64,000 bases of DNA from Macrostomum lignano (lineage: Eukaryota), in NCBI GenBank assembly GCA_002269645.1, contig NIVC01002766.1:62001-126000 (forward strand). Direction: 5' to 3'. The translations under genes and the position numbers were made by a program. Within the stretch, counting starts at the first letter, position 1. Every line of letters begins with the position of its first letter. The notes beneath the pieces are model-generated. The model had not been told where the DNA came from. It did not search any database and saw only the letters and a list, made by a program, of their open reading frames with translations. This document shows positions 22,911 through 64,000 of the stretch, one piece after another.

Positions 22911-22936
22911 AAATAACCAGACCAATACCACCTCAC

Positions 22937-43720: not shown

Positions 43721-44151
43721 CGTCGAGTCTAATGCAATGTAAACATGTACGTAATGCATACGGTCTGCTGGTAAATCAAGTTCTCCAGATTGTTTATGTA
43801 ACGCCAAAATCCAATAGAGTGAGGTACTTTCAATGCGTGTACCTGCAAAGTTATTCAAAAAAAAACTCTGAGCTCCTCAACAACCGCTGATATGCATTTA
43901 GGCACGTGCTCAAAAACTGTACCCAATCAATCTGCCGCAGTGTAACTAGAGAAGTCGGTAATATTGTTGAATAATTCAGACATTTTCGTTCGAGGCACGC
44001 ATGCATTTACTTGAAACTTGAAACAAACGTGTCTTATTCCCACCCGGAGGCTAGCGTATAAAATAACACTCAAAACACCCCAACAGGTGTTTCAGCCCTA
44101 CTACTCGAGTGGTTCTCGTTACTCGTTACTCGTTACCAGTCAAGTTTTACA

Positions 44152-44739: not shown

Positions 44740-44789
44740 GTGCAGGCGCGAGTTAAAGTTGCCTTTATGGTTGATTTATTATGATCTAC

Positions 44790-45585
44790 TCAGACCTTCC
44801 CACACTACCCAACCTACTCAATCCATCCAATCTACTTAACCTACTCAACCTACCAACATATCCAATCTACTTAACCTACCTAACCTACTAATCAACTTAA
44901 CCTACTAAACCTACCAATCCATCCAGTCTACTCAACCTACCAATCTACTCAACCTACCAATCCATCCAATCTACTCAACCTACCAATCTACTCAACCTAC
45001 CAATCCATCCAATCTACTCAACCTACCAATCCATCCAATCTACTCAACCTACCAATCCATCCAATCTACTCAACCTACCAATCCATCCAAATTACTCAAC
45101 CTACCAATCCATCCAATCTACTCAACCTACCAATCCATCCAATCTACTCAACCTACCAATCTACTCAACCTACCAATCCATCCAATCTACTCAACCTACC
45201 AATCCATCCAATCTACTCAACCTACCAATCCATCCAATCTACTCAACCTACCAATCCATCCAATCTACTCAACCTACCAATCCATCCAATCTACTCAACC
45301 TACCAATCCATCCAATCTACTCAACCTACCAATCCATCCAATCTACTCAACCTACCAATCCATCCAATCTACTCAACCTACCAATCCATCCAATCTACTC
45401 AACATACCAATCCATCCAATCTACTCAACCTACCAATCCATCCAATCTACTCAACCTACCAATCCATTCAATCTACTCAACCTACCAATCCATCCAATCT
45501 ACTCAACCTACCAATCCATCCAATCTACTCAACCTACCAATCCATTCAATCTACTCAACCTACCAATCCATCCAATTTACTTAAT
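44790..45585. repeat. 26-bp G-free minisatellite (CTACTCAACCTACCAATCCATCCAAT), NPL intron
   Basis: About 28 units plus degenerate left edge. Confidence 0.95.
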
Positions 45586-45599
45586 CCACACCACAACAG

Positions 45600-45971
45600 G
45601 CCATAATCGGTCTGGACGACCTGACTTTGCCAGCCAGATCGGTGGGTGTCCTGGACGGCATCGGCGCCAGCTACAATCTGATTCCGGACGTTGTCAATTC
45701 TCTAGCCAACAGCTTTGACTCGGGCAATCTGAGCACAGCTCGCAGCGAGTCCAGCCGCATCCGGTCCCTATTCGAGGCGATCTCATCGGCAGTGGAAGGC
45801 TACGGTATGGTGTCGCTGTTAAAAACCACCATGTCCTTGATGCGAATGGACCTAGGACCGCCGCGTCTGCCGTTGAAGCCGCTGAATTCGCCTGCTAGAA
45901 TCATTCTAGAACAGCGGCTAAAGTTCGACGGATTCTTAGCCAGGGATGAAGCGCAAGAGAAGCTGGCTTGA
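45600..45971 (+). CDS. NPL: NPL exon 2 (last)
   Basis: AIIGLDDLTLPARSVGVLDGIGASYN...MDLGPPRLPL resembles NPL FLFGVDEQLL...GAVGSTYN...LGPPRLPL; acceptor CAACAG|GCC; joined 319 aa; AATAAA 46064-46069. Confidence 0.88.
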   Translation, partial: AIIGLDDLTLPARSVGVLDGIGASYNLIPDVVNSLANSFDSGNLSTARSESSRIRSLFEAISSAVEGYGMVSLLKTTMSLMRMDLGPPRLPLKPLNSPARIILEQRLKFDGFLARDEAQEKLA

Positions 45972-46194
45972 AGACCAACTGAATTTAGAATGACATTTTG
46001 AAGACAATCGACTGCCGAGTGTGATATTCAATCAAGTTTAATCCAAAGACCACTTCAAATCAAAATAAAACTTATTATTTGAAATTGCAATATTTTTAGC
46101 TTCTGGACTTAAAGGTCATTTGAAGCTAATAAATACACTTCTTTAATGGGTTTTCACCACTGTGTAACTTCCAGTGCCAAGTCGCTAGGGATTT

Positions 46195-46808
46195 TTGCTA
46201 CTGGGGAATTCCTGCTACTGGGGAATTCCTGCTACTGGGGTATTCTTGCTACTGGGGTATTCCTGCTACTGGGGTATTATAGCTACTGGGGTATTCCTGC
46301 TACTGGGGTATTCCTGCTACTGGGGTATTCCTGCTACTGGGGTATTCCTGCTACTGGGGTATTCCTGCTACTGGGGTATTCCTGCTACTGGGGTATTCCT
46401 GCTACTGGGGTATTCCTGCTACTGGGGTATTCCTGCTACTGGGGTATTCCTGCTATTGGGGTATTCTTGCTACCGGAGTATTCTTGCTACTGGGGTATTC
46501 CTGCTAGTGGGGTATTTCGATTATTGGGGAATTCCTGCTACTGGGGTATTCCTGCTAGTGGGGTATTCTAGCTACTGGGGTATTCTAGCTACTGGGGTAT
46601 TCCTGCTACTGGGGTATTCCTGCTACTGGGGTATTCCTGCTAGTGGGGTATTTCGATTATTGGGGAATTCCTGCTACTGGGGTATTCTAGCTACTGGGGT
46701 ATTCTAGCTACTGGGGTATTCCTGCTACTGGGGTATTCCTGCTACTGGGGAATTCCTGCTACTAGGGTATTCCTGCTACTGGGGTATTCCTGCTAGTGGG
46801 GTATTCCT
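46195..46808. repeat. 17-bp minisatellite (GGGTATTCCTGCTACTG) between the convergent NPL and NUMA1 3' ends
   Basis: About 35 units. Confidence 0.95.
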
Positions 46809-47551
46809 ATACGGTATCTGAGAATTCCTGCTGTCGTCAAAGTTTTAAGGGCCGCTGTTAGAGTAGATTAGTGTAAAAAATTCCATGAAAACCCGTCAGT
46901 AATGACGACAATTTCAGTTTTAACAAAATGCATTACAACTAAAGCAGCAGAGACAGAGTTTTAATGTATTTGTGTGCGTGCAAGCAAACTGACGTTTTGC
47001 TATTAGTAGCAACAGCAACAATAAGGAAATATGATTTATGTAAAACAGCTTTTATTTGGTATTTGAGTGGACTATAAAATGTAAAATTAAAAAGTAACGG
47101 TTTATTTAAAGATTATTTAGGGTATGAATATTTTTAGCACTAAATAATTAATTCATAAATGCGCGTATTTAAAACGGACTTGCTGTAGAAAAGACGGATG
47201 CTTAACAAAATGCCCACAACAGTAGGTTTATTTTATAATAAATAAAGCCAAGAAAGAAGCAACAGTGACAACGAAAATGCATGCTAAATTATATTAAACT
47301 ACTATGAGTAATAAAAAGCAGTAGAAATAAACAAGGAAAACAGTTTTAACTGGGGAAAAGTACATACAGCACCAGTATGTTTTGTAAGCCAAAATGCAAA
47401 CTATTCAACTCGGAAAAATGTTTAGAACAAAAAGAAACAACAAAAGCTTTTTTATTCAAATCAATCAGAACTAAAATAGCCAACTACTACTGGTAGTAGG
47501 CGACGCGGTATAAAACAGTTCAGTTGCTATGGCAACGCACAGATTAATAAG

Positions 47552-47945
47552 TCAGTCGCCCATCACCAGTTTGCGTACAGTCTTAGCGCTGCTGCTGCCG
47601 CTGCCACCGCCTGCGGGTCGGCGAGGTCCCGGCCTGCCCGGGTTCATCTCGATGCTATAGACCAGGGTTTTCTTGGCTGGCACAACCGGTTCGGCCGAGC
47701 TAGACGAAGCTGATACAGAGCTGTTATTGTGCTGCTGCTGCCCAATGGCATGGCTGGAGCGATTCTCGCGTTCTGAGCCGCCGCTAGGCCAGCGCTGATG
47801 CTGCTGCGGCTGCTGCTGCTGTTGCTGCAGCGTCGACATGGAAGCCGACGTATTTTTCGGCCTAGTAGAAGCGGCGGCCGATGTCGTCGACGCCAGTCTT
47901 GGCGCGGCAGATTTCGGCGATTTGAACAGGCGCTGACGCTGAGGT

Positions 47946-47981
<36 letters not shown>

Positions 47982-48114
47982 ATTCCGCCAGCAGACAGGC
48001 GGTTACGATCGCTCAGCACAGCGGCGGATGTCGACGACCATGTCGACGCTAATGTCGATGTCAGGGCTGACGTGGCGATGGTTGAAGTGGACCGACTTGC
48101 CACGGCGGACGAAG
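47552..48114 (-). CDS. NUMA1: NuMA-like exon 10 (last)
   Basis: Phase-1 acceptor AATCCCAG|CT just after an in-frame TGA, branch-like CTGAT upstream; KKTLVYSIEMNP resembles NuMA RQSMAFSILNTP; minus-strand AATAAA at 47451-47456. Confidence 0.72.
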
Positions 48115-48188
48115 CTGGGATTCAGTTTGAGGGGCAGCAAAATCAGTCTGCGAACATTGCACTGACACAAATTGACTGTCGAACGTAC

Positions 48189-48221
48189 CTAAAGCTAAAA
48201 TACGACATGTGTCGCCGTTTT
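48189..48221 (-). CDS. NUMA1: NuMA-like 33-nt microexon (exon 9), (E)NGDTCRILAL
   Basis: TATCAG|AA...TTAG|GTACGT, phase 1 on both sides; gives IVESTENGDTCRILALAS versus NuMA ITDEEMKTGDPQETLRRAS. Confidence 0.6.
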
Positions 48222-48249
48222 CTGATACGACTTTTCTCCGCGTTGCTTC

Positions 48250-49222
48250 CCTGCTCTCTCTTCTCTCTCCCCCCTCTATCTTCATTTCTTCCCCCTCTCT
48301 CTCCCCCTTATCCTCTTTTCTTCCCCCCTATCCCTCCCCTCTATCCTCTTTCCTTCCCCCCCTCTCTCTCCTCTCTATCTTCTTTCCTCCACTCTCTCTC
48401 TCCCCTCTTATCTTCTTTCCTCCACTCTCTCTCTCCCCTCTTATCTTCTTTCCTCCACTCTCTCTCTCTCCCCTCTATCCTCTTTCCTCCACTCTCTCTC
48501 TCCCCTCTTATCTTCTTTCCTCCACTCTCTCTCTCCCCTCTTATCTTCTTTCCTCCACTCTCTCTCTCCCCTCTATCCTCTTTCCTCCACTCTCTCTCTC
48601 CCCTCTTATCTTCTTTCCTCCACTCTCTCTCTCCCCTCTATCTTCTTTTCTTCCCCCATCTCTCTCTCCCCTCTTATCTTCTTTCCTCCACTCTCTCTCT
48701 CCCCTCTATCCTCTTTTCTTCCCCCATCTCTCTCTCCCCTCTTATCTTCTTTCCTCCACTCTCTCTCTCCCCTCTATCCTCTTTCCATCCCCCATCTCTC
48801 TCTCCCCTCTATCTTCTTCCCTTCCCCTCCCCTTCTCCCCCTTCTATCCCCCTCTTTCCCCTTTTCCCTCTCTTCCTTTCCCCTTCTCTTCCCTCCCCCC
48901 TTTTTTACTTCCCCTTCTCTTCGCTTCCCCTCTCTTATCTTCTCCTCTCTTCCACCCCCTCTCTTCCCTTCCCCTCTCTTCCCTTCCCCTCTCTTCCCCC
49001 CTTCTCTTCCATCCCCCTCTCTCCCCTCCCCTTCTCTTCCATCCCTCCTCTTCCCTCCCCCTCTTCCCTCCCCTTCTCTTCAATCCCCCTCTCTTCCCTC
49101 CGCCTCTCTTCCCTCCCCCTCTCTTCCCTCCCCTTCTCTTCCCTCCCCCTCTCTTCCCTCCGCCTCTCTTCCCTCCCCCTCTCTTCCCTCTCCTCCCTTT
49201 CCTCTCCCCTCTCTTCCACCCA
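48250..49222. repeat. CT-rich low-complexity/degenerate tandem repeat (purine-rich on the NUMA1 sense strand)
   Basis: Almost exclusively C/T on + strand with about 28-30-bp and 21-bp periodic sub-blocks. Confidence 0.9.
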
Positions 49223-49262
49223 GGGATCACTTTTTTATCACTGAGGCTACAATGCCACTCAC

Positions 49263-49860
49263 CAGTGGACTCAACAATAGACCTGGGCGTAACGCTAGCA
49301 GTCTGAGTCTCAACCGGATACGAGCTGCGCAGCTGAGCCGGCTGCCGCTGATTCCTCTGCTGCAGTTCCGCGATACGCTTCCACTCAAGCAGATGCGCAT
49401 CCTCGTCTTCGCAGGACAGCTGGCCGCCTTTTCCGCCGCCGCCACCACCTGCGCCACCAGCAGCGGCCGAGCAGCCGTTATTACTAGCGTTATTACTAGT
49501 GCTCAGAGCGAACGGTCTGCGATCAAACACTGGTGAAGCGGCCATGTTCACGTCGGAGTTTGCCCGCACCAGCTGGTGCACCCGGTTCGACTGCAGCGGC
49601 GGCGTTGTCGGCAACTGGCGCTGCTCGTCGGCAGGCTCCGGCGATTCAACAACTCCACCGTTGCGACGCTGCTGTGCCGTGCGGATGTTGGCGGCCTCCT
49701 CCAGTTCCTGGCATCTCACCAGCAGGCGCTCCTTCATCTCAGCTTCTTCGTTGCGCTCTTCGATGGCTTTTTTCAATGCCGCCTTTCTACGCTGACAGGC
49801 CTCAACTAGGCTGGCCTGCTCAAGCTCCACCTGGTGGAGACTGGACCGCAGCTTGTGCGC
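49263..49860 (-). CDS. NUMA1: NuMA-like exon 8 (end of coiled coil and conserved tail motif)
   Basis: CEDEDAHLLEWKRIAELQQRNQRQPAQLRSSYPVET matches NuMA CQDEPEQLDDWNRIAELQQRNRVCPPHLKTCYPLES; donor G|GTGAGT, phase 1; acceptor CCAAAG|GCG (in-frame alternative at 49830). Confidence 0.88.
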
Positions 49861-49964
49861 CTTTGGGGTGGGATGGGGCGCAAAGCAACCATGGCATAGA
49901 GAATCGTGATATGTATCAATAATCCATGCGAAAATTCACTTAATCTTCTCTCACACAGGTACAT

Positions 49965-50158
49965 AATTCCTGACACAAACCTTGAATCCCTGACACATAC
50001 CAAGAATTCCTGACACATACCAAGAATTCCTGACACAAACCAAGAATCCCTGACACATACCAAGAATCCCTGACACATACCAAGAATTCCTGACAGAAAC
50101 CAATAATCTCTGACACATTCCAAGAATCCCTGACACATGTCTAAAATCCCTGACACAA
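49965..50158. repeat. 20-bp minisatellite (CCTGACACATACCAAGAAT(T/C))
   Basis: About 10 units. Confidence 0.9.
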
Positions 50159-50178
50159 AACTAGAAACCCCGACAAAC

Positions 50179-50661
50179 CTCCGCCTTGGATGCCTTCAAC
50201 TCCTCCTCCGCAGCCTCCAGCTCTTTAGTCAGCCTATCCGTCACGGCTTTAACCTCGCGTTGAACTTCTTCGCGGGCAGCTGCCGAGGCGCGCAGCTCGG
50301 CGCCGCTGCGCTGCCGATTGCTTCGATACTGCAGCTCCTGCAGCTGGTCCTGCAGCTCGGCCAGCTCCAGCTCCGACTTCGTTCGCAACTCGCGCAGCTT
50401 GTTGGCCGCTTCGGACTCCGCCTGCAGCCGATCGCTAGTGGTCGCGAGTTCGCGTCGGAGCCTGGCCGATTCGCGCTGCAACTCGTCCTGCTGGCTGGCC
50501 GCCAAGGCCAACCGATTGGACAGGCGATCGATCTCGGCATCTCGGCTGAGCAGCTCGTCTTCGCAATCGGCCAGGCGGCGCTGAAGGCTCTCGACTTTGC
50601 GCTGGGCTCGGTCGCGTTCCATGGCGATCGATTCCGACGCCTGCTCGGCCGCTTGGCGGGC
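50179..50661 (-). CDS. NUMA1: NuMA-like exon 7 (coiled coil)
   Basis: GCACAG|GCC ... GAG|GTTTGT; 161 codons; E/A/R/L heptads. Confidence 0.85.
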
Positions 50662-50789
50662 CTGTGCGAGGTTATTATGATTTATGATCAGGTATTGTTT
50701 GCGTTTGGAGTTTCCAGCATTGCATTTTTAGCTCAGGTTTTGCTCCATAGACTTTTTTGGCGCCATCCTGACGCCTTTTACAGGGCCAT

Positions 50790-52260
50790 TCTGACATTTC
50801 TCAGCTTCATTCTGACACATTTCTCAGCTTCATTCTGACACATTTCTCAGCTTCATTCTGACACATTTCTCAGCTTTATTCTGACACATTTCTCAGCTTC
50901 ATTCTGACACGTTTCTGAGCTTCATCCTGACACAATTCTCAGCTTCATCTTGACACATTTTTAAGCGCCATCCTGACACATTTCTCAGCTTCATTCTGAC
51001 ACATTTCTGAGCTTCATTCTGACACATTTCTGAGCTTCATTCTGACACATTTCTCAGCTTCATTCTGACTCATTTCTCAGCTTCATTCTGACACATTTCT
51101 CAGCTTCATTCTGACACATTTCTCAGCTTCATTCTGACACATTTCTCAGCTTCATTCTGACACATTTCTCAGCTTTATTCCGACACATTTCTCAGCTTCA
51201 TTCTGACACGTTTCTGAGCTTCATCCTGACACAATTCTCAGCTTCATCTGGACACATTTTTAAGCGCCATCCTGACACATTTCTCAGCTTCATTCTGACA
51301 CATTTCTCAGCTTCATTCTGACACATTTCTCAGCTTCATTCTGACACATTTTTCAGCTTCATTCTGACACATTTCTCAGCTTCATTCTGACACATTTCTC
51401 AGCTTCATTCTGACACATTTCTCAGCTTCATTCTGACACATTTCTCAGCTTTATTCCGACACATTTCTCAGCTTCATTCTGACACGTTTCTGAGCTTCAT
51501 CCTGACACAATTCTCAGCTTCATCTGGACACATTTTTAAGCGCCATCCTGACACATTTCTCAGCTTCATTCTGACACATTTCTCAGCTTCATTCTGACAC
51601 ATTTCTCAGCTTCATTCTGACACATTTTTCAGCTTCATTCTGACACATTTCTCAGCTTCATTCTGACACATTTTGCAGCTTCATTCTGACAAATTTCGCA
51701 GCTTCATTCTGATAAATTTCGCAGCTTCATTCTGACACATTTCTGAGCTTCATTCTGACACATTTCTCAGCTTCATTCTGACACATTTCTGAGCTTCATT
51801 CTGACACATTTCTGAGCTTCATTCTGACACATTTTTCAGCTTCATTCTGACAAATTTCGCAGCTTCATTCTGACACATTTCTGAGCTTCATTCTGACACA
51901 TTTCTCAGCTTCATTCTGACACATTTTCAGCTTCATTCTGACACATTTCTCAGCTTCATTCTGACACATTTCTCAGCTTCATTCTGACACATTTCTGAGC
52001 TTCATTCTGACACATTTCTCAGCTTCATTCTGACACATTTCTCAGCTTCATTCTGACACATTTCTCAGCTTCATCCTGACACATTTCTCAGCTTCATTCT
52101 GACACATTTCTCAGCTTCATTCTGACACATTTTTCAGCTTCATTCTGACACATTTCTCAGCTTCATTCTGACACATTTCTCAGCTTCATTCTGACACATT
52201 TCTCAGCTTCATTCTGACACATTTCTCAGCTTCATCCTGACACCTTTTTAGCTTTATTCT
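50790..52260. repeat. 23-bp minisatellite (CTGACACATTTCTCAGCTTCATT)
   Basis: About 64 units; a distinctive variant block recurs near 50905, 51205 and 51480. Confidence 0.96.
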
Positions 52261-52339
52261 GACAAATCTTTTATCGCCTTAACCCTGTGACACACTAACA
52301 CGAGCGTAAAAGCAATCCTCCAATTATAAATCAGCTCAC

Positions 52340-52726
52340 TTTGACGATCTCAGCGTCAACCCTCGCCTTCTCCTCCGTCGCGGTGTCCAGCAGGGCCTCC
52401 CGCTCAGCCAGGCGTTTGTCCTTCTCAGACAGGCTGTCGCGCATCAGGCGCAGCTCCTCCTGGAGATCTTTGCATCGGCGCTCGAGATTTTCGGCCAGCC
52501 GGCGAGAGTCCAACAGTTCGGCGCTGGGTTCGGGTTCGGCGGCGGCGGCTGCCGTAGCGGCTGCGGCAGCGGCGTCGGCTTCCAGTTGACAGATTCGCTC
52601 TTTGGCATTGTCGAGTTCGCATTGGATGTTGGTGAGCTCGCCTTCGAGTCGGAGTTGATTGTCCGCGGCGATCACCTGCTGGGCTTCCAGCTGCTCGTGC
52701 AGGTCCGCAACTTTGCGTTGATTGGC
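52340..52726 (-). CDS. NUMA1: NuMA-like exon 6 (coiled coil)
   Basis: TCTCCAG|GCC ... AAA|GTGAGC; 129 codons. Confidence 0.85.
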
Positions 52727-52789
52727 CTGGAGATGTTGGGGATTTTGTTGAATTGAGTTGTGGGAGTATGAGTGCTTTGAATATTCTGA

Positions 52790-55672
52790 GCTGCACAATG
52801 GGGATATTCCAAACTACACAATGGGATATTCCAAGCTACACAATGGGATATTCTAAGCTACACAATGGGATATTCCAAGCTACACAATGGGATATTCTAA
52901 GCTACACAATGGGATATTCCAAACTACACAATGGGATATTCCAAGCTACACAATGGGATATTCCAAGCTACACAATGGGATATTCCAAGCTACACAATGG
53001 GATATTCCAAGCTACACAATGGGATATTCTAAGCTACACAATGGGATATTCTAAGCTACACCATGGGATATTCCAAGCTACACAATGGGATATTCTAAGC
53101 TACACAATGGGATATTCTAAGCTACACAATGGGATATTCCAAGCTACACAATGGGGATATTCTAAGCTACACAATGGGATATTCCAAGCTACACAATGAA
53201 GATATTCCAAACTACACAATGGGATATTCCAAGCTACACAATGGGATATTCCAAGCTACACAATGGGATATTCGAAGCTACACAATGGGATATTCCAAGC
53301 TACACAATGGGATATTCCAAGCTACACAATGAAGATATTCCAAGCTACACAATGAAGATATTCCAAGCTACACAATGGGATATTCCAAGCTACACAATGG
53401 GATATTCCAAGCTACACAATGGGATATTCCAAGCTACACAATGAAGATATTCCAAGCTACACAATGAAGATATTCCAAGCTACACAATGGGATATTCCAA
53501 GCTACACAATGGGATATTCCAAGCTACACAATGGGATATTCCAAGCTACACAATGGGATATTCCAAGCTACACAATGGGATATTCCAAGCTACACAATGG
53601 GATATTCCAAGCTACACAATGGGATATTCCGAGCTACACAATGGGATATTCCAAGCTACACAATGGGATATTCCAAGCTACACAATGGGATATTCCAAGC
53701 TACACAATGAAGATATTCCAAGCTACACAATGAAGATATTCCAAGCTACACAATGGGATATTCCAAGCTACACAATGGGATATTCCAAGCTACACAATGG
53801 GATATTCCAAGCTACACAATGGGATATTCCAAGCTACACAATGGGATATTCCAAGCTACACAATGGGATATTCCAAGCTACACAATGGGATATTCTAAGC
53901 TACACAATGGGATATTCCAAACTACACAATGGGATATTCCAAGCTACACAATGGGATATTCCAAGCTACACAATGGGATATTCCAAGCTACACAATGGGA
54001 TATTCCAAGCTACACAATGGGATATTCTAAGCTACACAATGGGATATTCTAAGCTACACAATGGGATATTCCAAGCTACACAATGAAGATATTCCAAGCT
54101 ACACAATGGGATATTCCAAGCTACACAATGGGATATTCCAAGCTACACAATGGGATATTCCAAGCTACACAATGGGATATTCCAAGCTACACAATGGGAT
54201 ATTCCAAGCTACACAATGGGATATTCCAAGCTACACAATGGGATATTCCAAGCTACACAATGGGATATTCCAAGCTACACAATGGGATATTCCAAGCTAC
54301 ACAATGGGATATTCTAAGCTACACAATGGGATATTCCAAACTACACAATGGGATATTCCAAGCTACACAATGGGATATTCCAAGCTACACAATGGGATAT
54401 TCCAAGCTACACAATGGGATATTCCAAGCTACACAATGGGATATTCCAAGCTACACAATGGGATATTCTAAGCTACACAATGGGATATTCTAAGCTACAC
54501 AATGGGATATTCTAAGCTACACAATGGGATATTCTAAGCTACACAATGGGATATTCCAAGCTACACAATGGGGATATTCTAAGCTACACAATGGGATATT
54601 CCAAGCTACACAATGAAGATATTCCAAACTACACAATGGGATATTCCAAGCTACACAATGGGATATTCCAAGCTACACAATGGTTATATTCCAAGCTACA
54701 CAATGGGATATTCCAAGCTACACAATGGGATATTCCAAGCTACACAATGGGATATTCCAAGCTACACAATGGGATATTCCAAGCTACACAATGGGATATT
54801 CCAAGCTACACAATGAAGATATTCCAAGCTACACAATGGGATATTCCAAGCTACACAATGGGATATTCCAAGCTACACAATGGGATATTCCGAAGCTACA
54901 CAATGGGATATTCCAAGCTACACAATGAAGATATTCCAAGCTACACAATGAAGATATTCCAAGCTACACAATGGGATATTCCAAGCTACACAATGGGATA
55001 TTCTAAGCTACACAATGGGATATTCCAAACTACACAATGGGATATTCCAAGCTACACAATGGGATATTCCAAGCTACACAATGGGATATTCCAAGCTACA
55101 CAATGGGATATTCCAAGCTACACAATGGGATATTCTAAGCTACACAATGGGATATTCTAAGCTACACAATGGGATATTCCAAGCTACACAATGGGATATT
55201 CTAAGCTACACAATGGGATATTCTAAGCTACACAATGGGATATTCCAAGCTACACAATGGGGATATTCTAAGCTACACAATGGGATATTCCAAGCTACAC
55301 AATGGATATTCCAAGCTACACAATGGGATATTCCAAGCTACACAATGGGATATTCCAAGCTACACAATGGTTATATTCCAAGCTACACAATGGGATATTC
55401 CAAACTACACAATGGGATATTCCAAGCTACACAATGGGATATTCCAAGCTACACAATGGGATATTCCAAGCTACACAATGGGATATTCCAAGCTACACAA
55501 TGAAGATATTCCAAGCTACACAATGGGATATTCCAAGCTACACAATGGGATATTCCAAGCTACACAATGGGATATTCCAAGCTACACAATGGGATATTCC
55601 AAGCTACACAATGAGATATTCCAAACTACACAATGGGATATTCCAAACTACACAATGGGATATTCCAAACTA
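52790..55672. repeat. 22-bp minisatellite (GGGATATTCCAAGCTACACAAT)
   Basis: About 130 units; runs to within about 10 nt of the exon 5 donor. Confidence 0.97.
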
Positions 55673-55681
55673 CAAGCTCAC

Positions 55682-56161
55682 CTTAGCCGCAGCATCGTAC
55701 GCAGCCTTCAAGTCGGCCAGCTCAGCCAGGGCCTGATCTCTGGCAGCGCGTAATCCTTCAGCGAATTGGCGCTTCTCATTTAGCGCCGATTCGAATTCGG
55801 CGCGCGCTTCAGCTTGGCGCCGGTCGGCGTCCTCCATAGCGGCGGCGCAGCGCTCCCTGGTGTCGTGAGCCTCCTGACTGCCTGCTTGCCGGGCCAATTG
55901 AAGCTCTTCAACAGTGTGCGCCAGCTCGGCGGCCAGCTGATCCCGATCCTGCTCAAGGCAACGCTTCACTTCGTCTAGTTCGCGTTCTCGAGTTTCGAAG
56001 TTTTTGCGCGAATTAGCCAGCTCTGCTTTGACCGACGCTAGGGCCGTTTTGTGCTCCTCGGCCTGCATAAGCAGCTCGGTTTGTAACTCTTTCACTCGTT
56101 CGTTGGCGCTGTCCAACTGCGATTCCACGAACTTGTAGGCCTCTTGCATTTGTTCAATGAG
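55682..56161 (-). CDS. NUMA1: NuMA-like exon 5 (coiled coil)
   Basis: CTTGCAG|CTC ... AAG|GTGAGC; 160 codons. Confidence 0.85.
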
Positions 56162-56269
56162 CTGCAAGCGTGTGTTGTGTGTTGTGTATGGCTTAGTGAC
56201 GTATGAGCCACACTTGCCCGGGTGACATGTTGGCGGCAGATAAAGTGGGATTTGCATCGAAGGAAGGAA

Positions 56270-56533
56270 GGGGAAACATTGTGAAGGGAGATTGTGAAGG
56301 GAGAGAGAAGGTGATAAAGAGAGGGAGATAAAAGCGAGGGTAAAGATGGTGATGCGAGGGGAAAGATGATGGAAGGGAGGGGAAAGATAATGGAAGGAGG
56401 AAGATGATAGTAGGGGAAGAAGACCAACGGAGAGGAAAGATGGTAAAGGGAGGGGAAAGATGGTAAAGGGAGGGGAAAGATGGTAAAGGGAGGGGACAGA
56501 TGGTAAAGTTAGGGGAAATATGGTAAAGGGAGG
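56270..56533. repeat. Left arm of the 20-bp purine array (GGGAGGGGAAAGATGGTAAA), degenerate leftward
   Basis: Same unit as 57526-58352. Confidence 0.85.
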
Positions 56534-57525
56534 TGTAGTGAGCCGCTAGTTTATGGTTAGGCGTCGCCCTTGTCAGCTGTTCCCTCGCCTTCGCCCTGGG
56601 TTGCTGTCTGCCGCTGGTCAGCTTCCCGCCCCTCCCTTTCGTCTGTCTGCTGCTGCCCTTGGCCTGTTCTGGCCTTTTGCGTCTTTGTTCTCAGCCCTTA
56701 GCTTCTCTGCTGTGGGCTGTCTCTGTTTCGTTCCCGTCCCGTTTTCCTCTGTCATGTGAGCAAGTCACATGACAGACTCTGCGTTCTTCAAGTCCTAAAG
56801 TGCAGTAAACATGTTTACTGCACTCGTTGGCCCTGTTTACCGGGTGAGTCACGTGCTTTCGGACCCCTCCCTTCTCTAAGGAGAGGAGTGACTCATGTTG
56901 CTAAAAATAGCAACTGAGTCACAGCCGCGTGTACTCTGGCCGGGGACCTCAAGTGACGTCAGTTCTAAAAATAGAACAAGTCACGAGGTCTTCCGCACGC
57001 TTCTACCCTGCCCAAGACTCTCGAGTGACGTCAGTTCTAAAAATAGAACGAGTCACGAGGTCTTCTGCGTGGGTGTTTCCCGGCTATAAATAGGAGCCCT
57101 CTCCCCCTTGTTTCCGTCAAGGAGTCTTTTCTGTGTCTAGTTCTGTGCTAGTCTTGTTCTTCCGTGTGATTACGTCCCGAGTGTCTGAGTCTCTGCATAC
57201 ATTGAGTCTGTTCGTATTGGTCTGACTGAGACCCGACTAAAGCGCCACAAGCCTACGAGAGACTAACTCAGCCCTCCCTCTGCCATCCAAGCCCGGCAGG
57301 TACGGCTGACGAGACGCCTAGTACGTTGAACTGCAAATCTGCACTAGGTGCTGTGTTCGTTGACTTCGTTATTTCGTTCCGACGGGAAGCTCACCTCACT
57401 GAAGGCCGAGACCTGAAGGAACTGGTGGCAGCACTACCTACGCTACTAAAGTTAAGAAGGCTTCTAATCGAGAGGACGGAGCCCAAGTCACTGCGCTGTA
57501 CAGCAGGACAACCACAGGTACAACA
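56534..57525 (+). mobile_element. Solo LTR, 992 bp, probably Ty3/Gypsy-type, inserted in a minisatellite, antisense to NUMA1
   Basis: Starts TGTAGT, ends ACAACA; 4-bp TSD GAGG at 56530-56533 and 57526-57529, and removing it restores the repeat unit; TATAAA at 57085-57090; no internal coding region. Confidence 0.82.
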
Positions 57526-58352
57526 GAGGGGAAAGATGGTAAAGGGAGAGTAGAGATGGTAAAGGGAGGGGAAAGATGGTAAAGGGAGTGGAAAGATGGT
57601 CAAGGGAGTGGAAAGATGGTAAAGGGAGTGGAAAGATGGTAAAGGGAGGGGAAAGACGGTAAAGGGAGGGGAAAGACGGTAAAGGGAGGGGAAAGATGGT
57701 AAATGGAGGGGAAATATGGTAAAGGGAGGGGAAAGACGGTATAGGGAGGTGAAAGATGGTAAAGGGAGGTGAAAGATGGTAAAGGGAGGTGAAAGATGGT
57801 AAAGGGAGGTGAAAGATGGTAAAGGGAGGGGACAGATGGTAAAGGGAGGGGAAAGATGGTAAAGGGAGTGGAAAGATGGTAAAGGGAGGGAAAAGATGGT
57901 AAAGGGAGGGGACAGATGGTAAAGGGAGTGGAAAGATAATAAAGGGAGGGGAAAGATGGTAAAGGGAGGTGAAAGATGGTAAAGGGAGTGGAAAGATGGT
58001 AAAGGGAGGTGAAAGATGGTAAAGGGAGGGGACAGATGGTAAAGGGAGGGGAAAGATGGTAAAGGGAGTGGAAAGATGGTAAAGGGAGTGGAAAGATGGT
58101 AAAGGGAGGGGAAAGACGGTAAAGGGAGGAGAAAGACGGTAAAGGGAGGGGAAAGATGGTAAAGGGAGGGGCAAGACGGTAAAGGGAGGGGAAAGATGGT
58201 AAAGGGAGGGGAAAGATGGTAAAGGGAGGGGAAAGATGGTAAAGGGAGTGGAAAGATGGTAAAGGGAGGGGAAAGACGGTAAAGGGAGGGGAAAGATGGT
58301 AAAGGGAGGGGAAAGATGGTAAAGGGAGGGGAAAGATGGTAAAGGGAGGTGA
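57526..58352. repeat. Right arm of the 20-bp purine array (GGGAGGGGAAAGATGGTAAA)
   Basis: About 41 units, period 20. Confidence 0.96.
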
Positions 58353-58421
58353 GGGGAACCAATGTAAAAGTGAGCAATAGGATCAACAATCAATTCCAGC
58401 AGATCCGCAGGCGTCACTCAC

Positions 58422-59088
58422 AGTTTTAGTTCTCTCAAACTGCTTCTCCAGCCGTTCCACACTGGTAGTCCTATTTTTCATTTCGGTCAGCGCGGCATCC
58501 TTAGCGGCCGTCTCGGCCTCCAGTTTGCTGGCCAACTCCCGCAGCCTGTCAGCTTCAGCCTGCAGATCGGCAACCCGATCGTTGGCAGCGGAAGCCTCCA
58601 ACTGAGCAGCGTCCAGTTGGAGCTCCTTGCTGGCCAGCTCCTTGCGCAAGTTGTTCATTGTAGACTCGATAGAGGCGACAGATTTCTTAGCGGCCGCTTC
58701 GCGATCGGCGGCTGCATTCTCGGCGGCCTGCTTGATTTTCTCTGCCTCTTCCAATGCCTCCTTGGAGGTGGCGTCGGCTTCAAGGCGAATCTGCAGCATC
58801 TCCATCCGCGCGATGCCCAAATCAGCGTCCAGCTTGTTTCGTTCCTCGCGAACTTTGGCGGCATCAGCTCTGGCTGCTTCCAACTCCTGTTCCAAGTAGT
58901 AGATCTTCTTCTCCGTGACGCCGAACAGGGTCTCGGCCGAGTCTGGCTCGGCCGCCGCAGCCATGGCCGAATCGTCCAATCTGGAGCTCATCTCGGCCAG
59001 CTGTTGGCGCATCTCGGCGCAACGGCGCTCGGCCGCCTCGGCCGAATCTTGGGCCTCCTTTTTGGCCTGCAACAGCCGGTTGATTTCG
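58422..59088 (-). CDS. NUMA1: NuMA-like exon 4 (coiled coil)
   Basis: CCCACAG|C (phase 2) ... ACT|GTGAGT; 667 nt. Confidence 0.85.
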
Positions 59089-59111
59089 CTGTGGGGGGGG
59101 GGGTAGGCGGC

Positions 59112-59850
59112 GATGATTCTCATGCATACCGTGAGATTTTGTGATGATTCTCATGTATACAGTGAGATTTTGTGATGATTCTCATGTATACAGTGAGATT
59201 TTGTGATGATTCTCATGTATACAGTGAGATTTTGTGATGATTCTCATGCATACAGTGATATTTTGTGATGATTCTCATGCATACCGTGAGATTTTGTGAT
59301 GATTCTCATGCATACCGTGAAATTTTGTGATGATTCTCATGTATACAATGAGATTTTGTGATGATTCTTAATGTTCTCATGTATACACTGAGATTATGTA
59401 ATGATTCTCATGCATACAGTGAGATTTTGCGATGATTCTCATGTATACAGTGAGATTTTGTGATGATTCTTATGTATACAGTGAGATTTTGTGATGATTC
59501 TCATATAAACAGTGAGATTTTGTGATGATTCTCATGTATACAGTGAGATTTTGTGATGATTCTTATGTATACAGTGAGATTTTGTGATGATTCTCATATA
59601 CACAGTGAGATTTTGTGATGATCCTCATGTATACAGTGAGATTTTGTGATGATTCTTATGTATACAGTGAGATTTTGTGATGATTCTCATATACACAGTG
59701 AGATTTTGTGATGATTCTTATGTATACAGTGAGATTTTGTGATGATCCTCGTGTATACAGTGAGATTTTGTGATGATTCTCATATACACAGTGAGATTTT
59801 GTGATGATTCTCATGCATACCGTGAGATTTTGTGATGATTCTCATGTATA
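59112..59850. repeat. 31-bp minisatellite (CTCATGTATACAGTGAGATTTTGTGATGATT)
   Basis: About 23 units filling almost the whole intron. Confidence 0.95.
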
Positions 59851-59896
59851 GTCGGTGTGATTTTGATATGCCAATTAACTATAGCCGAATACTCAC

Positions 59897-60249
59897 GAAT
59901 TAGCGCGCATCAACTCGTCAGTGAGGTGTCCAACGTGCTCTTCGGCTTCCCGTCGAGTACAGCTGCCCTGCCTGTTGGCCTGCAGTCGTTCCAGCGTCGC
60001 TTTCATCGCCTCCCGTTCGTGCATCAGCCTGTCGAACTCCTGCTCCAGGTAGCTGTACCGATCGGCATACCGGCTCATCTCTTGAAGCGACTCGGTCACG
60101 TGACCCAGCTGCTCGGCCTGCTCAGCTAATCGACGATTTTCCTCTCGCAGCTCGGCCAGTTCGTTTGATTGGTGGCCGAGCTCGGACCGGCTGCGGCGGA
60201 GACGGTCTTCCAGATCGGAGCAGTCGCGCTCCCGTCTGGCCAGCTGGTT
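59897..60249 (-). CDS. NUMA1: NuMA-like exon 3 (coiled coil)
   Basis: ATCGCAG|AAC ... TC|GTGAGT (phase 2); 353 nt. Confidence 0.85.
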
Positions 60250-60369
60250 CTGCGATGCGCATGAGAATGAATAAAAATACCAACGCAAAGGTAATTCTGC
60301 CGATTCTTTTTGACTCCTGAACACATTACATGCGCGCCAATGCTGTACTCATAGAAACGCTCAGAGCTG

Positions 60370-60810
60370 GTGAAGGGAGGGGAAAGATGATAAAGAGGGG
60401 TAAAGATTATGAAGGGAGAAAGATGATTAAGGGAAAGATGTTTAAGGGAGAAGAAAGATGATTAAGGGAGAAAGATGATTAAGGGAGAAAGATGATTAAG
60501 GGAGAAGAAAGATAATTAAAGGAGAAGAAAGATGCTTAAGGGAGGAGAAAAGATGATTAAGGGAGGGAAAGATGATTAAGGGAGGAGAAAGATGATCAAG
60601 GGAGGAGAAAGATGATCAAGGGAGGAGAAAGATGATTAAGGGAGGGAAAGATAATTAAGGGAGAAAGATGATCAAGGGAGGAGAAAGATGCTTAAGGGAG
60701 GGAAAGATTATTAAGGTAGAGAAAGATTGTGAAGGCAGGGGAAAGATACTGAAGGGAGGATAACGATGATGAAGGGAGGGGAAGATTGTGAAGAGAGGTG
60801 AAAGATGATG
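60370..60810. repeat. Degenerate purine-rich repeat of about 21 bp (AAGGGAGGAGAAAGATGATT)
   Basis: Related to the 20-bp unit in intron 4. Confidence 0.85.
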
Positions 60811-60824
60811 AAGTAAGCACAGCG

Positions 60825-61010
60825 GTGTACAGCTCACACAGGGTGTACAGCTCACACAGGGTGTACAGCTCACACAGGGTGTACAGCTCACACAGGGTGT
60901 ACAGCTCACACAGGGTGTACAGCTCACACAGGGTGTACAGCTCACACAAGGTGTACAGCTCAGGCAGGGTGTACAGGTCACACAGGGTGTAGAGCTCACA
61001 CAGGGTGTAG
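60825..61010. repeat. 18-bp minisatellite (GGGTGTACAGCTCACACA)
   Basis: About 10 units. Confidence 0.93.
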
Positions 61011-61075
61011 AGCGACCCTTTGACTTTTTAATCAGGGTGCCCACATGGGTTGTAGAAACATTAATAACAGCAAAC

Positions 61076-61648
61076 CTGAGCATCAAGCAGCTGCTGCTCG
61101 AGCATGTCCTTCATAGTCATCTCCGACTGCAGCCGATGATTCAATTGTTGAATCGCCTCCGACTCGGCAGTCGATGCCGTCCATGTCGCCGCCGCGGAAG
61201 TTGACATAGACACCGAGCCAGCTACCGAGTTCCTCTGTCGGCAGCGTCGGCGAACCAGAGGCGAAGCGGCCAGGTGCAGCTTCAGCGGTGAGCAGGTAGC
61301 GGCAGTGGCAGCGTCCAGAGACCCGCCAGTTGGACCAGCGGCAGCAGCGGCGGCCGCAGCGGCGGAAGCAGCCGACGGGAACAGCACCCGAGCCAGTTGA
61401 GGACTAGCCGAAGACTTCTCCGCTGCTGCACCAGGATGATCTTCATCGTCAGCGGTAGAATCCGTGTGCAAAGCTCGAAGCTGATCCAGGCTTAGGCAGC
61501 CGTCCTCGGTGTCTAACAGCTGTCGGGTTAGCGACATCACAGTGCGCTGACTGGCTGCGCCAAGGCGGTCGGCCGCGGCGGCCACGCGAGCCTGCGAGCT
61601 GCCTGTCTGCAGCCAGGCGCCCAGCAACAGCAGGCAGAGGCGCAGGGC
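61076..61648 (-). CDS. NUMA1: NuMA-like exon 2 (end of the N-terminal hook/CH-like domain and linker)
   Basis: GCACGCAG|GCC ... CAG|GTTTGC; QLLDTEDGCLSLDQL resembles NuMA FVLDHEDGLNLNEDL; 191 codons. Confidence 0.82.
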
Positions 61649-61816
61649 CTGCGTGCATATTTAATCCGTTAGTTCTGAACTGACTCCCACTGACTCACAA
61701 GGAATCCCACTTACTCACTAGTAATCCCACTGACTCATTCACTGGGAATCCCACTGATTCACTCATTAGGAATCCCACTGACCAAAATAAGCTAAACAGA
61801 TCCCATAAAATCTTAC

Positions 61817-62149
61817 CTGTAATTCGAATCCAGAATCCTGAGCCATCAGGCACTCCCAATTAACCAGTTCAACAATTCGAACCCGATAGAACGCGTCCAG
61901 GAACTCTTCGATAGCCGCAAATCGAGCCATTGGCGTATCGATTGCAGCCGTTTGGGGCGCCGGAGCCGCGCAACAGCCGAGACTGACGCAGAGGTCGCGC
62001 AATAAGCGACCATCGGCCAAGTCTGACTCTGTTGGCGGTCTGTTGCCCTTGCCAGTGGAGGGAGAAACAGTGCCGGATAATAGCTGGCCAATCCAGGCCA
62101 ACAGGCAGGACCGCCTAGCGGGGTCTACTGGGGCGGTGGTGTCCTCGTC
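61817..62149 (-). CDS. NUMA1: NuMA-like first coding exon seen (N-terminal hook/CH-like domain); start either ATG 62158 or supplied by splicing at 62149
   Basis: RRSCLLAWIGQL...DLADGRLL resembles NuMA RGAALLSWVNSL...QLQDCSIF; donor CAG|GTAAGA; 111 codons; ten exons sum to 4470 nt in frame. Confidence 0.8.
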
Positions 62150-64000
62150 CTGAAGCATTTTACAGTGTGATTAAGCTGAAGCAGGATGGGATCCCCAGTC
62201 CTGAAGCATTTTACAGTGTAATTAAGCCCAGGTAAGATGGGATCCCCAGTCCTGAAGCATTTTACAGTGTCATTAAGCTGAGGCAATATCGGATCCCCAG
62301 TCCTGAAGCATTTTACAGTGTGATTAAGCTGAAGCAGGATGGGATCCCCAGTCCTGAAGCATTTTACAGTGTGATTAAGCTGAGGTAGGATGGGATCCCA
62401 GTCCTGAAGCATTTTACACTGTGATTAAGCTGAAGCAGGATGATATCCCCAGTCCTGAAGCATTTTACAGTGTGATTAAGCTGAGGTAGGATGGGATCCC
62501 CAGTCCTGAAGCATTTTACAGTGTGATTAAGCTGAAGCAGGATGGGATCCTCAGTCCTGAAGCATTTTACAGTGTGATTAAGCTGAGGCAATATGGGATC
62601 CCCAGTTCTGAAGCATTTTACAGTGTGATTAAGCTGAAGCAGGATGGGATCCCCAGTCCTGAAGCATTTTACAGTGTGATTAAGCTGAGGTAGGATGGGA
62701 TCCCCAGTCCTGAAGCATTTTACAGTGTGATTAAGCTGAGGCAATATTGGATCCCCAGTCCTGAAGCATTTTACAGTGTGATTAAGCTGAGGCAATATGG
62801 GATCCCCAGTTCTGAAGCATTTTACAGTGTGATTAAGCTGAAGCAGGATGGGATCCCCAGTCCTGAAGCATTTTACAGTGTGATTAAGCTGAGGTAGGAT
62901 GGGATCCCCAGTCCTGAAGCATTTTACAGTGTGATTAAGCTGAGGTAGGATGGGATCCCCAGTCCTGAAGCATTTTACAGTGTGATTAAGCTGAGGCAAT
63001 ATTGGATCCCCAGTCCTGAAGCATTTTACAGTGTGATTAAGATGAGGTAGAATGGGATCCCCAGTCCTGAAGCATTTTACAGTGTGATTTAGCTGAGGCA
63101 ATATCGGATCCCCAGTCCTGAAGCATTTTACAGTGTGATTAAGCTGAAGCAGGATGGGATCCCCAGTCCTGAAGCATTTTACAGTGTCATTAAGCTGAGG
63201 CAATATTGGATCCCCAGTTCTGAAGCATTTTACAGTGTGATTAAGCTGAGGTAGGATGGGATCCCCAGTCCTGAAGCATTTTACAGTGTGATTAAGCTGA
63301 GGTAGGATGGGATCCCCAGTCCTGAGGCATTTTACAGTGTCATTAAGCTGAGGTAGGATGGGATCCCCAGTCCTGAAGCATTTTACAGTGTAATTAAGCC
63401 CAGGTAAGATGGGATCCCCAGTCCTGAAGCATTTTACAGTGTCATTAAGCTGAGGCAATATCGGATCCCCAGTCCTGAAGCATTTTACAGTGTGATTAAG
63501 CTGAGGTAGGATGGGATCCCCAGTCCTGAAGCATTTTACAGTGTGATTAAGCTGAGGTAGGATGGGATCCCCAGTCCTGAAGCATTTTACAGTGTGATTA
63601 AGCTGAGGCAATATTGGATCCCCAGTCCTGAAGCATTTTACAGTGTGATTAAGCTGAGGCAATATGGGATCCCCAGTTCTGAAGCATTTTACAGTGTGAT
63701 TAAGCTGAAGCAGGATGGGATCCCCAGTCTTGAAGCATTTTACAGTGTGATTAAGCTGAGGTAGGATGGGATCCCTAGTCCTGAAGCATTTTACAGTGTG
63801 ATTAAGCTGAGGCAATATTGGATCCCCAGTCCTGAAGCATTTTACAGTGTGATTAAGCTGAGGTAGGATGGGATCCCCAGTCCTGAAGCATTTTACAGTG
63901 TGATTAAGCTGAGGTAGGATGGGATCCCCAGTCCTGAAGCATTTTACAGTGTAATTAAGCCCAGGTAAGATGGGATCCCCAGTCCTGAAGCATTTTACAG
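62150..64000. repeat. 51-bp minisatellite abutting the NUMA1 5' end, about 36 units, continues off the right edge
   Basis: Unit CCTGAAGCATTTTACAGTGTGATTAAGCTGAGGTAGGATGGGATCCCCAGT; period 51 (62149 to 62200). Confidence 0.97.

What the first reader, a model, noticed from the sequence alone, without database searches (positions are those of the whole stretch)
62149..64000. About 36 tandem copies of the NUMA1 start/acceptor junction
On the sense strand each 51-bp unit reads CTTAAT(branch-like)CACACTGTAAA-ATG-CTT-CAG|GAC, identical to the real exon boundary, then closes at TAA (MLQDWGSHP..SA*). Only the last copy continues into NuMA (ATG CTT CAG GAC GAG...). The array is therefore either a battery of decoy 3' splice or trans-splice acceptors, or a battery of 12-codon uORFs. 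In either case copy number could act as an expression rheostat for a spindle gene.
Basis: partly seen in the sequence, partly recalled or inferred. Interest (0 to 1): 0.75.

Follow-up and report, generated by a model that had tools for sequence, protein, structure and literature searches.

The report
Minisatellite overlapping a flatworm NuMA start
A 51-base repeat, present at least 36 times in a row, copies the start codon region of a flatworm spindle gene, but it is most likely one more neutral minisatellite in a genome packed with them, not an expression dial.

Summary
Window 62147-64000 holds at least 36.4 head-to-tail copies of a 51-bp unit, and the window end cuts the array. On the minus (sense) strand each unit carries CTTAATCACACTGTAAA-ATG-CTT-CAG-GAC. 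Only the copy nearest the gene runs on into a long ORF.

The window is Macrostomum lignano (assembly Mlig_3_7). The gene is a NuMA-family member. Its C-terminal part matches solved human NuMA LGN-binding peptides, and its N-terminus is homologous to a nemertean protein that carries the Pfam NuMA hook domain.

The context is ordinary for this genome:
- 40% of the window is minisatellite, in 21 large arrays.
- Every one of the gene's eight introns is 45-98% array.
- At a duplicated locus the same arrays sit in the same places with 1.4-5-fold different copy numbers.

My best reading is a neutral array. It was born by tandem duplication of the segment from -39 to +12 around the start codon, and it is kept out of the mature mRNA. 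The likeliest route is spliced-leader trans-splicing at an acceptor in the last unit. That step is inferred, not shown.

A graded uORF rheostat is implausible. A decoy-acceptor role cannot be excluded without RNA data.

The parts
62147..64000 (-). 51-bp minisatellite, at least 36.4 copies, truncated by the window end. The unit equals positions -39..+12 relative to the gene's ATG.
62156..62158 (-). Start codon of the NuMA-like gene. It lies inside the last repeat unit, in the context TGTAAAATGC (A at -3).
   Evidence: the 1478-aa model matches the length of the gene call
62150..62155 (-). CTTCAG, a match to the M. lignano trans-splice acceptor motif. If used, the first exon base is 62149, and the ATG at the end of the spliced leader would be in frame with GAC GAG GAC...
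   Evidence: motif and SL sequence from PMC8629364; usage not tested
62176..62181 (-). Second CTTCAG acceptor-motif match, ending 17 nt upstream of the ATG. This is the usual acceptor-to-ATG distance in this window's genes.
   Evidence: usage not tested
62171..62173 (-). In-frame TAA 12 nt upstream of the ATG. The same TAA in each unit ends the 12-codon uORF of the unit before it.
61817..62158 (-). Coding exon 1 (114 codons), the first part of the NuMA-type hook-like N-terminus, which continues into exon 2; donor CAG|GTAAGA.
47552..62158 (-). NuMA-like gene with nine coding exons: 62158-61817, 61648-61076, 60249-59897, 59088-58422, 56161-55682, 52726-52340, 50661-50179, 49851 (or 49830)-49263, 48114-47552. 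Product 1478 (or 1471) aa.
49324..49395 (-). Approximate position in exon 8 of the conserved NuMA LGN-binding motif (SCEDEDAHLLEWKRIAELQQRNQ).
   Evidence: 6hc2_B E 4.4e-4; 3ro2_B E 0.039; coordinates estimated from the exon model, not computed exactly

Best explanation
The array is a minisatellite. It arose by tandem duplication, followed by unequal exchange, of a 51-bp segment spanning -39 to +12 around the start codon of the Macrostomum lignano NuMA-family gene. It is one of many such arrays that fill the non-coding DNA of this genome, and it most likely has no regulatory purpose. The gene still works because the array does not end up in the mature mRNA. The most likely reason is that the 5' end of the mRNA is made by spliced-leader trans-splicing at an acceptor in the last unit. 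The candidates are CTTCAG|CTTAAT, 17 nt before the ATG, or CTTCAG|GAC, where the leader's own terminal ATG would be in frame. Everything upstream would then be discarded as outron. Shown: the array, its unit structure, the gene identity, the minisatellite-rich context, the copy-number instability of neighbouring arrays, and the motif matches. Inferred: the origin by duplication, neutrality, and removal by trans-splicing.
For: The array and unit anatomy are established. The window is M. lignano Mlig_3_7: one search gives GCA_002269645.1 contig NIVC01002766.1, and PMC5730564 names NIVC01000000 as that assembly. Tandem repeats make up 13% of that genome and 40.3% of this window, in 21 blocks of 300 bp or more. 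All 8 introns of this gene are 45-98% array. At the duplicated locus L001 the same arrays sit at the same positions with different copy numbers: 38.8 vs 7.8, 30.2 vs 5.7, 36.1 vs 23.6, 10.6 vs 31.5 and 64.4 vs 46.4. Inside the array, variant unit types recur in multi-unit blocks (string ABCADEFGHAFIHAFFIJCAIFFFBCFFIHAKIFF), which is typical of unequal exchange. The uORF peptide varies freely and is broken in 4 of 35 units. About 30-39% of M. lignano genes are SL trans-spliced, with enrichment among conserved and stem-cell genes; the acceptor motif is [T/C]TNCAG and the leader ends in ATG. Repeats are reported to inflate operon and outron spacers. The sense strand of the array has 43 motif matches and no GTRAG donor, which fits the outron condition quoted. 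Other genes in the window have a CAG acceptor 2-25 nt before their ATG.
Against: No RNA evidence could be reached, so the transcript 5' end, SL usage and TSS are unknown. If the whole array is transcribed, about 70 equivalent acceptors compete with the last one, and nothing shown here explains why the last would win. Exon definition against the donor 342 nt downstream is only a suggestion. In the eight true introns no array comes closer than 23 nt to an acceptor, so an array that duplicates an acceptor and an ATG is unusual even in this window. The 38-nt block containing the ATG and acceptor is the most uniform part of the unit; this could reflect constraint instead of homogenisation. The 5' end of the duplicated locus could not be fetched, so the age and variability of this particular array are unknown.
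Confidence: 0.6

Rival explanations
1. The array is transcribed, and its units act as decoy (trans-)splice acceptors and/or serial 12-codon uORFs, so that copy number tunes NuMA output.
For: Each unit has an intact ATG (36 of 36) and 31 of 35 have a 12-codon ORF. There are 43 [T/C]TNCAG matches on the sense strand, about 23 per kb against 1.7 per kb in the rest of the gene. A yUnAy-like TTAAT lies 21 nt before CAG|GAC (read from the sequence). The ATG/acceptor block is the least variable part of the unit.
Against: Thirty-five uORFs with A at -3 and 12 nt between stop and next AUG would, under leaky scanning and reinitiation, shut the main ORF off; they would not grade it (inference). The uORF peptides are not conserved, and 4 units are broken. 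The same acceptor motif occurs once per unit on the other strand. Neighbouring arrays with no such content behave the same way. No expression data exist here.
Confidence: 0.1
2. Transcription starts inside the last unit, or weakly in every unit. The array would then be essentially promoter or upstream DNA, and the mRNA would have a leader of about 10-17 nt.
For: The array leaves no unique DNA between itself and the ATG, so a conventional TSS would have to lie in a unit. TCACACT (62170-62164) fits the loose initiator pattern YYANWYY (read from the sequence). About 60-70% of M. lignano genes are not trans-spliced.
Against: There is no TATA-like element in the unit. The initiator pattern is very low in information. 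Every unit would be an equally good start site, and nothing distinguishes the last one.
Confidence: 0.15
3. The array fills a cis-spliced 5'-UTR intron, like the eight coding introns, with a non-coding first exon beyond the window end.
For: All eight introns of this gene are mostly array. The unit ends in acceptor-like CAG sites.
Against: In the true introns arrays stop at least 23 nt short of the acceptor, whereas here the acceptor itself is repeated. The same competing-acceptor problem arises. No upstream exon is visible, because the window ends inside the array.
Confidence: 0.12
4. The array is coding: one sense frame is open for 483 codons (repeats of LNHTVKCFRTGDPILPQ).
For: ORF 62364..63815 on the minus strand.
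Against: This frame differs from the gene's frame. About 44% of random 17-codon units are stop-free in a given frame. Many arrays in this window give equally long spurious ORFs. The homologue's N-terminus aligns to residue 11 of the gene product.
Confidence: 0.02

Closest known systems
Minisatellites / tandem repeats of the Macrostomum lignano genome (13% of Mlig_3_7; Wudarski et al. 2017, PMC5730564)
   Same: Head-to-tail units of tens of bp; kilobase-scale arrays; variant units in higher-order blocks; location in introns and gene spacers; unstable copy number at neighbouring arrays.
   Different: The unit includes a start codon, the first four codons of a gene and two acceptor-like sites. 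It has the longest single-unit period of the window's large arrays (51 bp; longer TRF periods are multiples of shorter units).
Expression-modulating VNTRs in 5' regions (INS VNTR, MAOA-uVNTR, 5-HTTLPR; the 'tuning knob' idea and yeast promoter repeats) - from my own knowledge
   Same: A variable tandem array immediately 5' of a gene.
   Different: Those arrays act on transcription and do not contain the start codon. No copy-number-to-expression relation was tested here.
Serial uORF control (GCN4 with four uORFs, ATF4) - from my own knowledge
   Same: Short upstream ORFs ahead of a main ORF.
   Different: Known cases have few, individually tuned uORFs with reinitiation spacing. Here there would be 35 identical ones 12 nt apart, which predicts shut-off. 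Their presence in the mRNA is unproven.
Spliced-leader trans-splicing outrons, and the '5'-UTR sanitising' hypothesis (quoted in PMC8629364); the flatworm SL 3'-terminal AUG used as an initiator (Cheng et al. 2006, from my own knowledge)
   Same: Acceptor motif [T/C]TNCAG near the ATG; no upstream donor in cis; upstream AUG-rich DNA that would be discarded; the leader's ATG is in frame at CAG|GAC.
   Different: Trans-splicing of this gene was not observed here. An outron made of dozens of copies of the acceptor itself has not, to my knowledge, been described.
NuMA / Mud / LIN-5 family
   Same: Hook-type N-terminus, coiled-coil-like middle of roughly 1000 residues, and a C-terminal LGN/Pins-binding motif (EWKRIAELQQRN).
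   Different: The sequence is very divergent: there is no direct Pfam hit and no database relative above 36% identity.

Membership tests
Minisatellite (VNTR-type tandem array) | Head-to-tail units of about 10-100 bp | tested here: met
   Period 51, 36.4 copies, 92% matches; constant 51-bp spacing
Minisatellite (VNTR-type tandem array) | Variant units arranged in higher-order or interspersed patterns, as unequal exchange produces | tested here: met
   Eleven variant types; recurring blocks such as IHAF, BC and FFI
Minisatellite (VNTR-type tandem array) | Copy number varies between alleles or duplicated loci | not testable with these tools
   The 5' end of the duplicated locus lies outside L001. 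Five neighbouring arrays differ 1.4-5-fold between the two loci.
uORF-mediated translational control | The uORFs are present in the mature mRNA leader | not testable with these tools
   No transcript data could be reached
uORF-mediated translational control | uORF integrity or peptide is maintained | tested here: inconclusive
   36 of 36 ATGs are intact and 31 of 35 ORFs have 12 codons, but the peptides vary and 4 are broken. Array homogenisation gives the same picture.
SL trans-splice acceptor / outron (M. lignano) | [T/C]TNCAG at the junction close to the start codon | tested here: met
   CTTCAG at 62181-62176 and at 62155-62150; motif from PMC8629364. The motif also occurs on the opposite strand of every unit.
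SL trans-splice acceptor / outron (M. lignano) | No donor site upstream in cis | tested here: met
   No GTRAG on the sense strand of the 1.85 kb of array seen. The sequence beyond the window is unknown.
SL trans-splice acceptor / outron (M. lignano) | SL-containing reads map to the acceptor | not testable with these tools
   No RNA-seq access
NuMA / Mud / LIN-5 | N-terminal NuMA-type hook domain (Pfam PF21670) | tested here: inconclusive
   No direct Pfam hit, even at E 10. The only true relative among 1.84 billion representatives, P0002 (Tubulanus polymorphus; E 8.8e-7, 36% identity), hits PF21670 at 1e-13. The AlphaFold model was too poor to use (pLDDT 48.6).
NuMA / Mud / LIN-5 | C-terminal LGN/Pins-binding motif | tested here: met
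   phmmer against the PDB: 6hc2_B NuMA, E 4.4e-4, aligned SCEDEDAHLLEWKRIAELQQRNQ to TCQDEPEQLDDWNRIAELQQRNR; 3ro2_B NuMA peptide, E 0.039.
NuMA / Mud / LIN-5 | Long central coiled coil | tested here: inconclusive
   The central ~1000 residues of the 1478-aa model are rich in E, L, A, R and Q. Only weak sub-threshold Pfam hits to coiled-coil-type families were found. No coiled-coil predictor was run.

The most novel reading that the evidence does not exclude
The whole array is transcribed as outron, and its roughly 70 acceptor copies compete with the productive last acceptor for the spliced leader. Array length, which changes quickly in this genome, would then set the share of translatable NuMA mRNA: a copy-number-encoded dosage control of a spindle gene that could differ between the duplicated chromosome copies. 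A broader version is that minisatellites in this genome are preferentially seeded at RNA-processing signals. The intron 5 and intron 7 arrays start 7 and 3 nt after their donors, and this array covers an acceptor and the ATG.
Probability: 0.08. Interest if true: 0.6.

Novelty: new member of a known kind. Interest (0 to 1): 0.25.

Why it matters
As it stands, this is an ordinary minisatellite in a genome already known to be 13% tandem repeat, so it matters little on its own.

It is still a neat natural test case. About 36 identical copies of a start codon and an acceptor site sit directly upstream of an essential mitotic gene. How the cell picks the right copy bears on acceptor choice in spliced-leader trans-splicing. 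It also bears on the old idea that trans-splicing frees 5' regions from constraint by discarding upstream AUGs.

The locus also warns annotators that start codons and first exons in this genome can lie inside repeat-masked DNA.

Tried and rejected
- **Word-index protein searches.** Queries with the first 305 aa, with exon 1 alone and with P0002 found no relatives, nor the locus's own annotated protein. The first query may have been swamped by its poly-Ala stretch.
- **Pfam.** No hit for the N-terminus at E up to 10, and none meaningful for the whole 1478-aa model.
- **PDB sequence searches of the N-terminus.** Single sequence and two-sequence profile gave nothing, apart from an insignificant CH-domain hit.
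- **AlphaFold of the N-terminus** from a two-sequence alignment gave mean pLDDT 48.6. I judged it too poor and ran no fold search.
I did not try the same look-up through another tool. As a result, the 5' end of the duplicated locus and the DNA beyond window position 64000 were not seen.
- **Look-up of the unspliced exon-1 ORF:** not on record.
- **Shared core motif among the 25 array units:** not beyond chance (5-mers p about 0.04, 6-mers p about 0.12 against shuffles).
- **Rfam** on the whole window: nothing. No SL RNA gene is present in the window.
- **The 29-mer** does not occur elsewhere in the window or in L001.
- **Supplements of three M. lignano papers** hold no NuMA entry, and no paper holds both terms.
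- **Coding-repeat reading of the array:** rejected. The open frame is not the gene's frame, and spurious ORFs of this kind are common in this window's arrays.

Full report
**1. The observation**

Tandem Repeats Finder finds one array at 62147..64000 with period 51, 36.4 copies, 92% matches and no indels. The array runs into the window end, so the true copy number is at least 36.

Read on the minus strand, every unit contains CTTAATCACACTGTAAAATGCTTCAGGAC. This 29-mer occurs 36 times with at most 2 mismatches, against none in 100 shuffles, and nowhere else in the window or in the related locus L001. Spacing is 51 bp throughout except for one 50-bp unit.

- All 36 ATGs are intact.
- 31 of the 35 upstream copies open a 12-codon ORF (MLQDWGSHP[A/T]SA and variants) that stops at the TAA in the next unit's CTTAAT.
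- Two have an early stop, one reads through to 29 codons, and the 50-bp unit gives a frameshifted 95-codon ORF.
- Only the proximal copy (ATG 62158-62156) continues as ATG CTT CAG GAC GAG GAC into a long exon.

**2. Where the window comes from**

The intronless eL36 gene of the window is encoded, with exactly this protein, on two contigs of GCA_002269645.1: NIVC01002766.1, which matches the window's gene spacing, and NIVC01001069.1, a duplicated locus fetched as L001. NIVC01000000 is the annotated Mlig_3_7 assembly of the flatworm Macrostomum lignano (PMC5730564).

That genome is reported to be 13% tandem repeat. Between 30 and 39% of its genes are spliced-leader (SL) trans-spliced. The 35-nt leader ends in ATG, and the acceptor motif is [T/C]TNCAG (PMC8629364).

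**3. The gene**

I built a minus-strand model of nine coding exons with canonical GT..AG borders:

- 62158-61817
- 61648-61076
- 60249-59897
- 59088-58422
- 56161-55682
- 52726-52340
- 50661-50179
- 49851 (or 49830)-49263
- 48114-47552

With the 49851 acceptor the product is 1478 aa, exactly the length of the gene call on record for this locus. With 49830 it is 1471 aa. I chose 49851 to match that length, so the agreement is supportive rather than independent evidence that the annotated CDS starts at ATG 62158.

Evidence on gene identity:

- The N-terminal 164 aa have no Pfam or PDB sequence match.
- A full HMMER scan of 1.84 billion representatives found one true relative, P0002. This is a 184-aa protein of the nemertean Tubulanus polymorphus (E 8.8e-7, 36% identity).
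- P0002 matches Pfam PF21670, the NuMA N-terminal hook domain, at 1e-13. Its Met1 aligns to residue 11 of the window protein, so no long upstream coding exon is missing.
- Independently, the exon-8 stretch SCEDEDAHLLEWKRIAELQQRNQ matches solved human NuMA chains from LGN complexes: 6hc2_B (E 4.4e-4) and 3ro2_B (E 0.039).

The gene has a hook-like N-terminus, a central region of roughly 1000 residues rich in E, L, A, R and Q, and the LGN-binding motif.

**4. The surroundings**

- 40.3% of the 64-kb window lies in arrays with period 10 or more, in 21 blocks of at least 300 bp. The 51-bp array is one of them.
- All eight introns of the NuMA-like gene are 45-98% array.
- Arrays also fill the spacers between same-strand genes, eL36 to a DHDPS-family gene and eL13 to a VPS9-domain gene. 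This fits the published remark that repeats inflate operon and outron spacers in this species.

At the duplicated locus L001 the same array families sit at the same positions, but with very different copy numbers:

| Array | Window copies | L001 copies |
|---|---|---|
| 33-bp | 38.8 | 7.8 |
| 26-bp | 30.2 | 5.7 |
| 17-bp | 36.1 | 23.6 |
| 20-bp | 10.6 | 31.5 |
| 23-bp | 64.4 | 46.4 |

The flanking sequence aligns at 85-97% identity across blocks that include both unique and array sequence. Arrays in this region are thus old in position, fast-changing in length and evidently tolerated.

Inside the 51-bp array, variation is concentrated in about five positions of a 13-nt stretch. The variant types recur in multi-unit blocks, which is the signature of unequal exchange.

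**5. What is unusual**

The unit, phased as -39..+12 around the ATG, includes the start codon, four codons and two acceptor-like CTTCAG sites (62181-62176 and 62155-62150). In the eight true introns no array comes nearer than 23 nt to an acceptor, although two begin 3 and 7 nt after a donor. An array that repeats an acceptor and an ATG is therefore the odd one out even here.

The simplest origin is a tandem duplication of a 51-bp segment that happened to span the start codon, followed by expansion. That is inference. The alternative is that the gene adopted an ATG from a pre-existing array. 

**6. How the gene can work**

If the array were part of the mature leader, a scanning ribosome would meet 35 AUGs in a good context (A at -3). 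Each is followed by a 12-codon ORF that ends 12 nt before the next AUG. By the established scanning and reinitiation rules this predicts virtually no initiation at the main AUG. A graded uORF rheostat is therefore not plausible (inference), and the mature mRNA must lack most or all units.

Three routes remain.

*(a) SL trans-splicing at an acceptor in the last unit, with the array discarded as outron.*
- Both CTTCAG sites fit the species' motif.
- The -17 site is at the usual distance: other genes in the window have a CAG acceptor 2-25 nt before their ATG.
- There is no GTRAG donor on the sense strand of the array.
- At CAG|GAC the leader's terminal ATG would be in frame.
- Conserved and proliferation-related genes are enriched among trans-spliced genes.

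*(b) A transcription start inside the last unit.*

*(c) A cis-spliced 5'-UTR intron with an exon beyond the window.*

I favour (a), but it is not shown. The motif is cheap, since the opposite strand also has one match per unit. And if the whole array is transcribed, the last acceptor must somehow out-compete its copies. Pairing with the donor 342 nt downstream (exon definition) is my suggestion for how.

**7. Verdict**

The feature is real, the gene label is right, and the unit anatomy is as described. The functional reading is not supported by anything I could test. The context makes a neutral minisatellite the best explanation: confidence about 0.85 for that part, and about 0.45 for removal by trans-splicing specifically.

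A decoy-acceptor dosage effect cannot be excluded (about 0.1). It would be settled by mapping SL-containing and cap-selected reads across the junction, and by comparing array length with expression between the two gene copies.

Relative to known systems this is a new member of a known kind, a 5' minisatellite in a repeat-rich genome. It has one curious property, duplication of the start codon and acceptor, which makes it a possible test locus for acceptor choice in trans-splicing.

**8. Dead ends**

- Two of the three word-index protein searches returned nothing and the third returned only the query itself.
- The structure model was too poor to use.
- There is no shared core motif among the arrays.
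- There were no Rfam hits and no SL gene in the window.
- No NuMA entry appears in the M. lignano papers or the supplements held.
- The unspliced exon-1 ORF is not on record.

Noticed in passing
window 1-64000: 40.3% of the window is tandem arrays with period 10 or more, in 21 blocks of at least 300 bp (periods 15-51 bp, up to 3.2 kb). Many produce long spurious ORFs in the six-frame list.
   Followed up: yes
window 49965-50175 and 52781-55674 (minus-strand introns 7 and 5 of the NuMA-like gene): These two intronic arrays begin 3 and 7 nt after the donor GT. The first pseudo-unit of the intron 7 array resembles the donor-proximal sequence, so its units carry donor-like GTATGT/TTTTGT. With only eight introns the closeness is not statistically compelling.
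   Followed up: partly
L001 10484-19668 versus window 42444-52264: The duplicated locus has the same array families at the same positions, with 1.4-5-fold different copy numbers in both directions.
   Followed up: yes
L001 about 14560-15720: Intron 8 of the duplicated gene copy carries an extra ~1.1-kb segment that the window lacks. It includes a perfect 54-bp x 5 array and a second copy of the 3' end of exon 8 with its donor.
   Followed up: no
window 41962-42279 (+) and 34208-34873 (-): The ribosomal protein genes eL36 and eL13 are intronless single ORFs. Each is followed on the same strand by another gene (DHDPS family; VPS9 domain), with a minisatellite filling most of the spacer (42444-43718; 32547-33972). 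These may be trans-spliced operons.
   Followed up: partly
window 12098-12490 (-): A 130-aa ORF with a weak, below-cut-off match to a homeodomain-like HTH (PF13565, E 2.8e-5). It is probably a remnant of a DNA-transposon transposase.
   Followed up: partly
window 62147-64000 (+ strand): The opposite strand of every unit also carries an acceptor-motif match (TTACAG). The B-type units carry CAG|GTAAGA donor-like sites. This shows how readily splice-like motifs arise in these units.
   Followed up: yes
window 16781-26928 (-): Ankyrin-repeat exons are separated by about 9 kb made almost wholly of five different arrays (34-, 25-, 15-, 21- and 16-bp units). It is the same intron-filling pattern in a second gene.
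   Followed up: no
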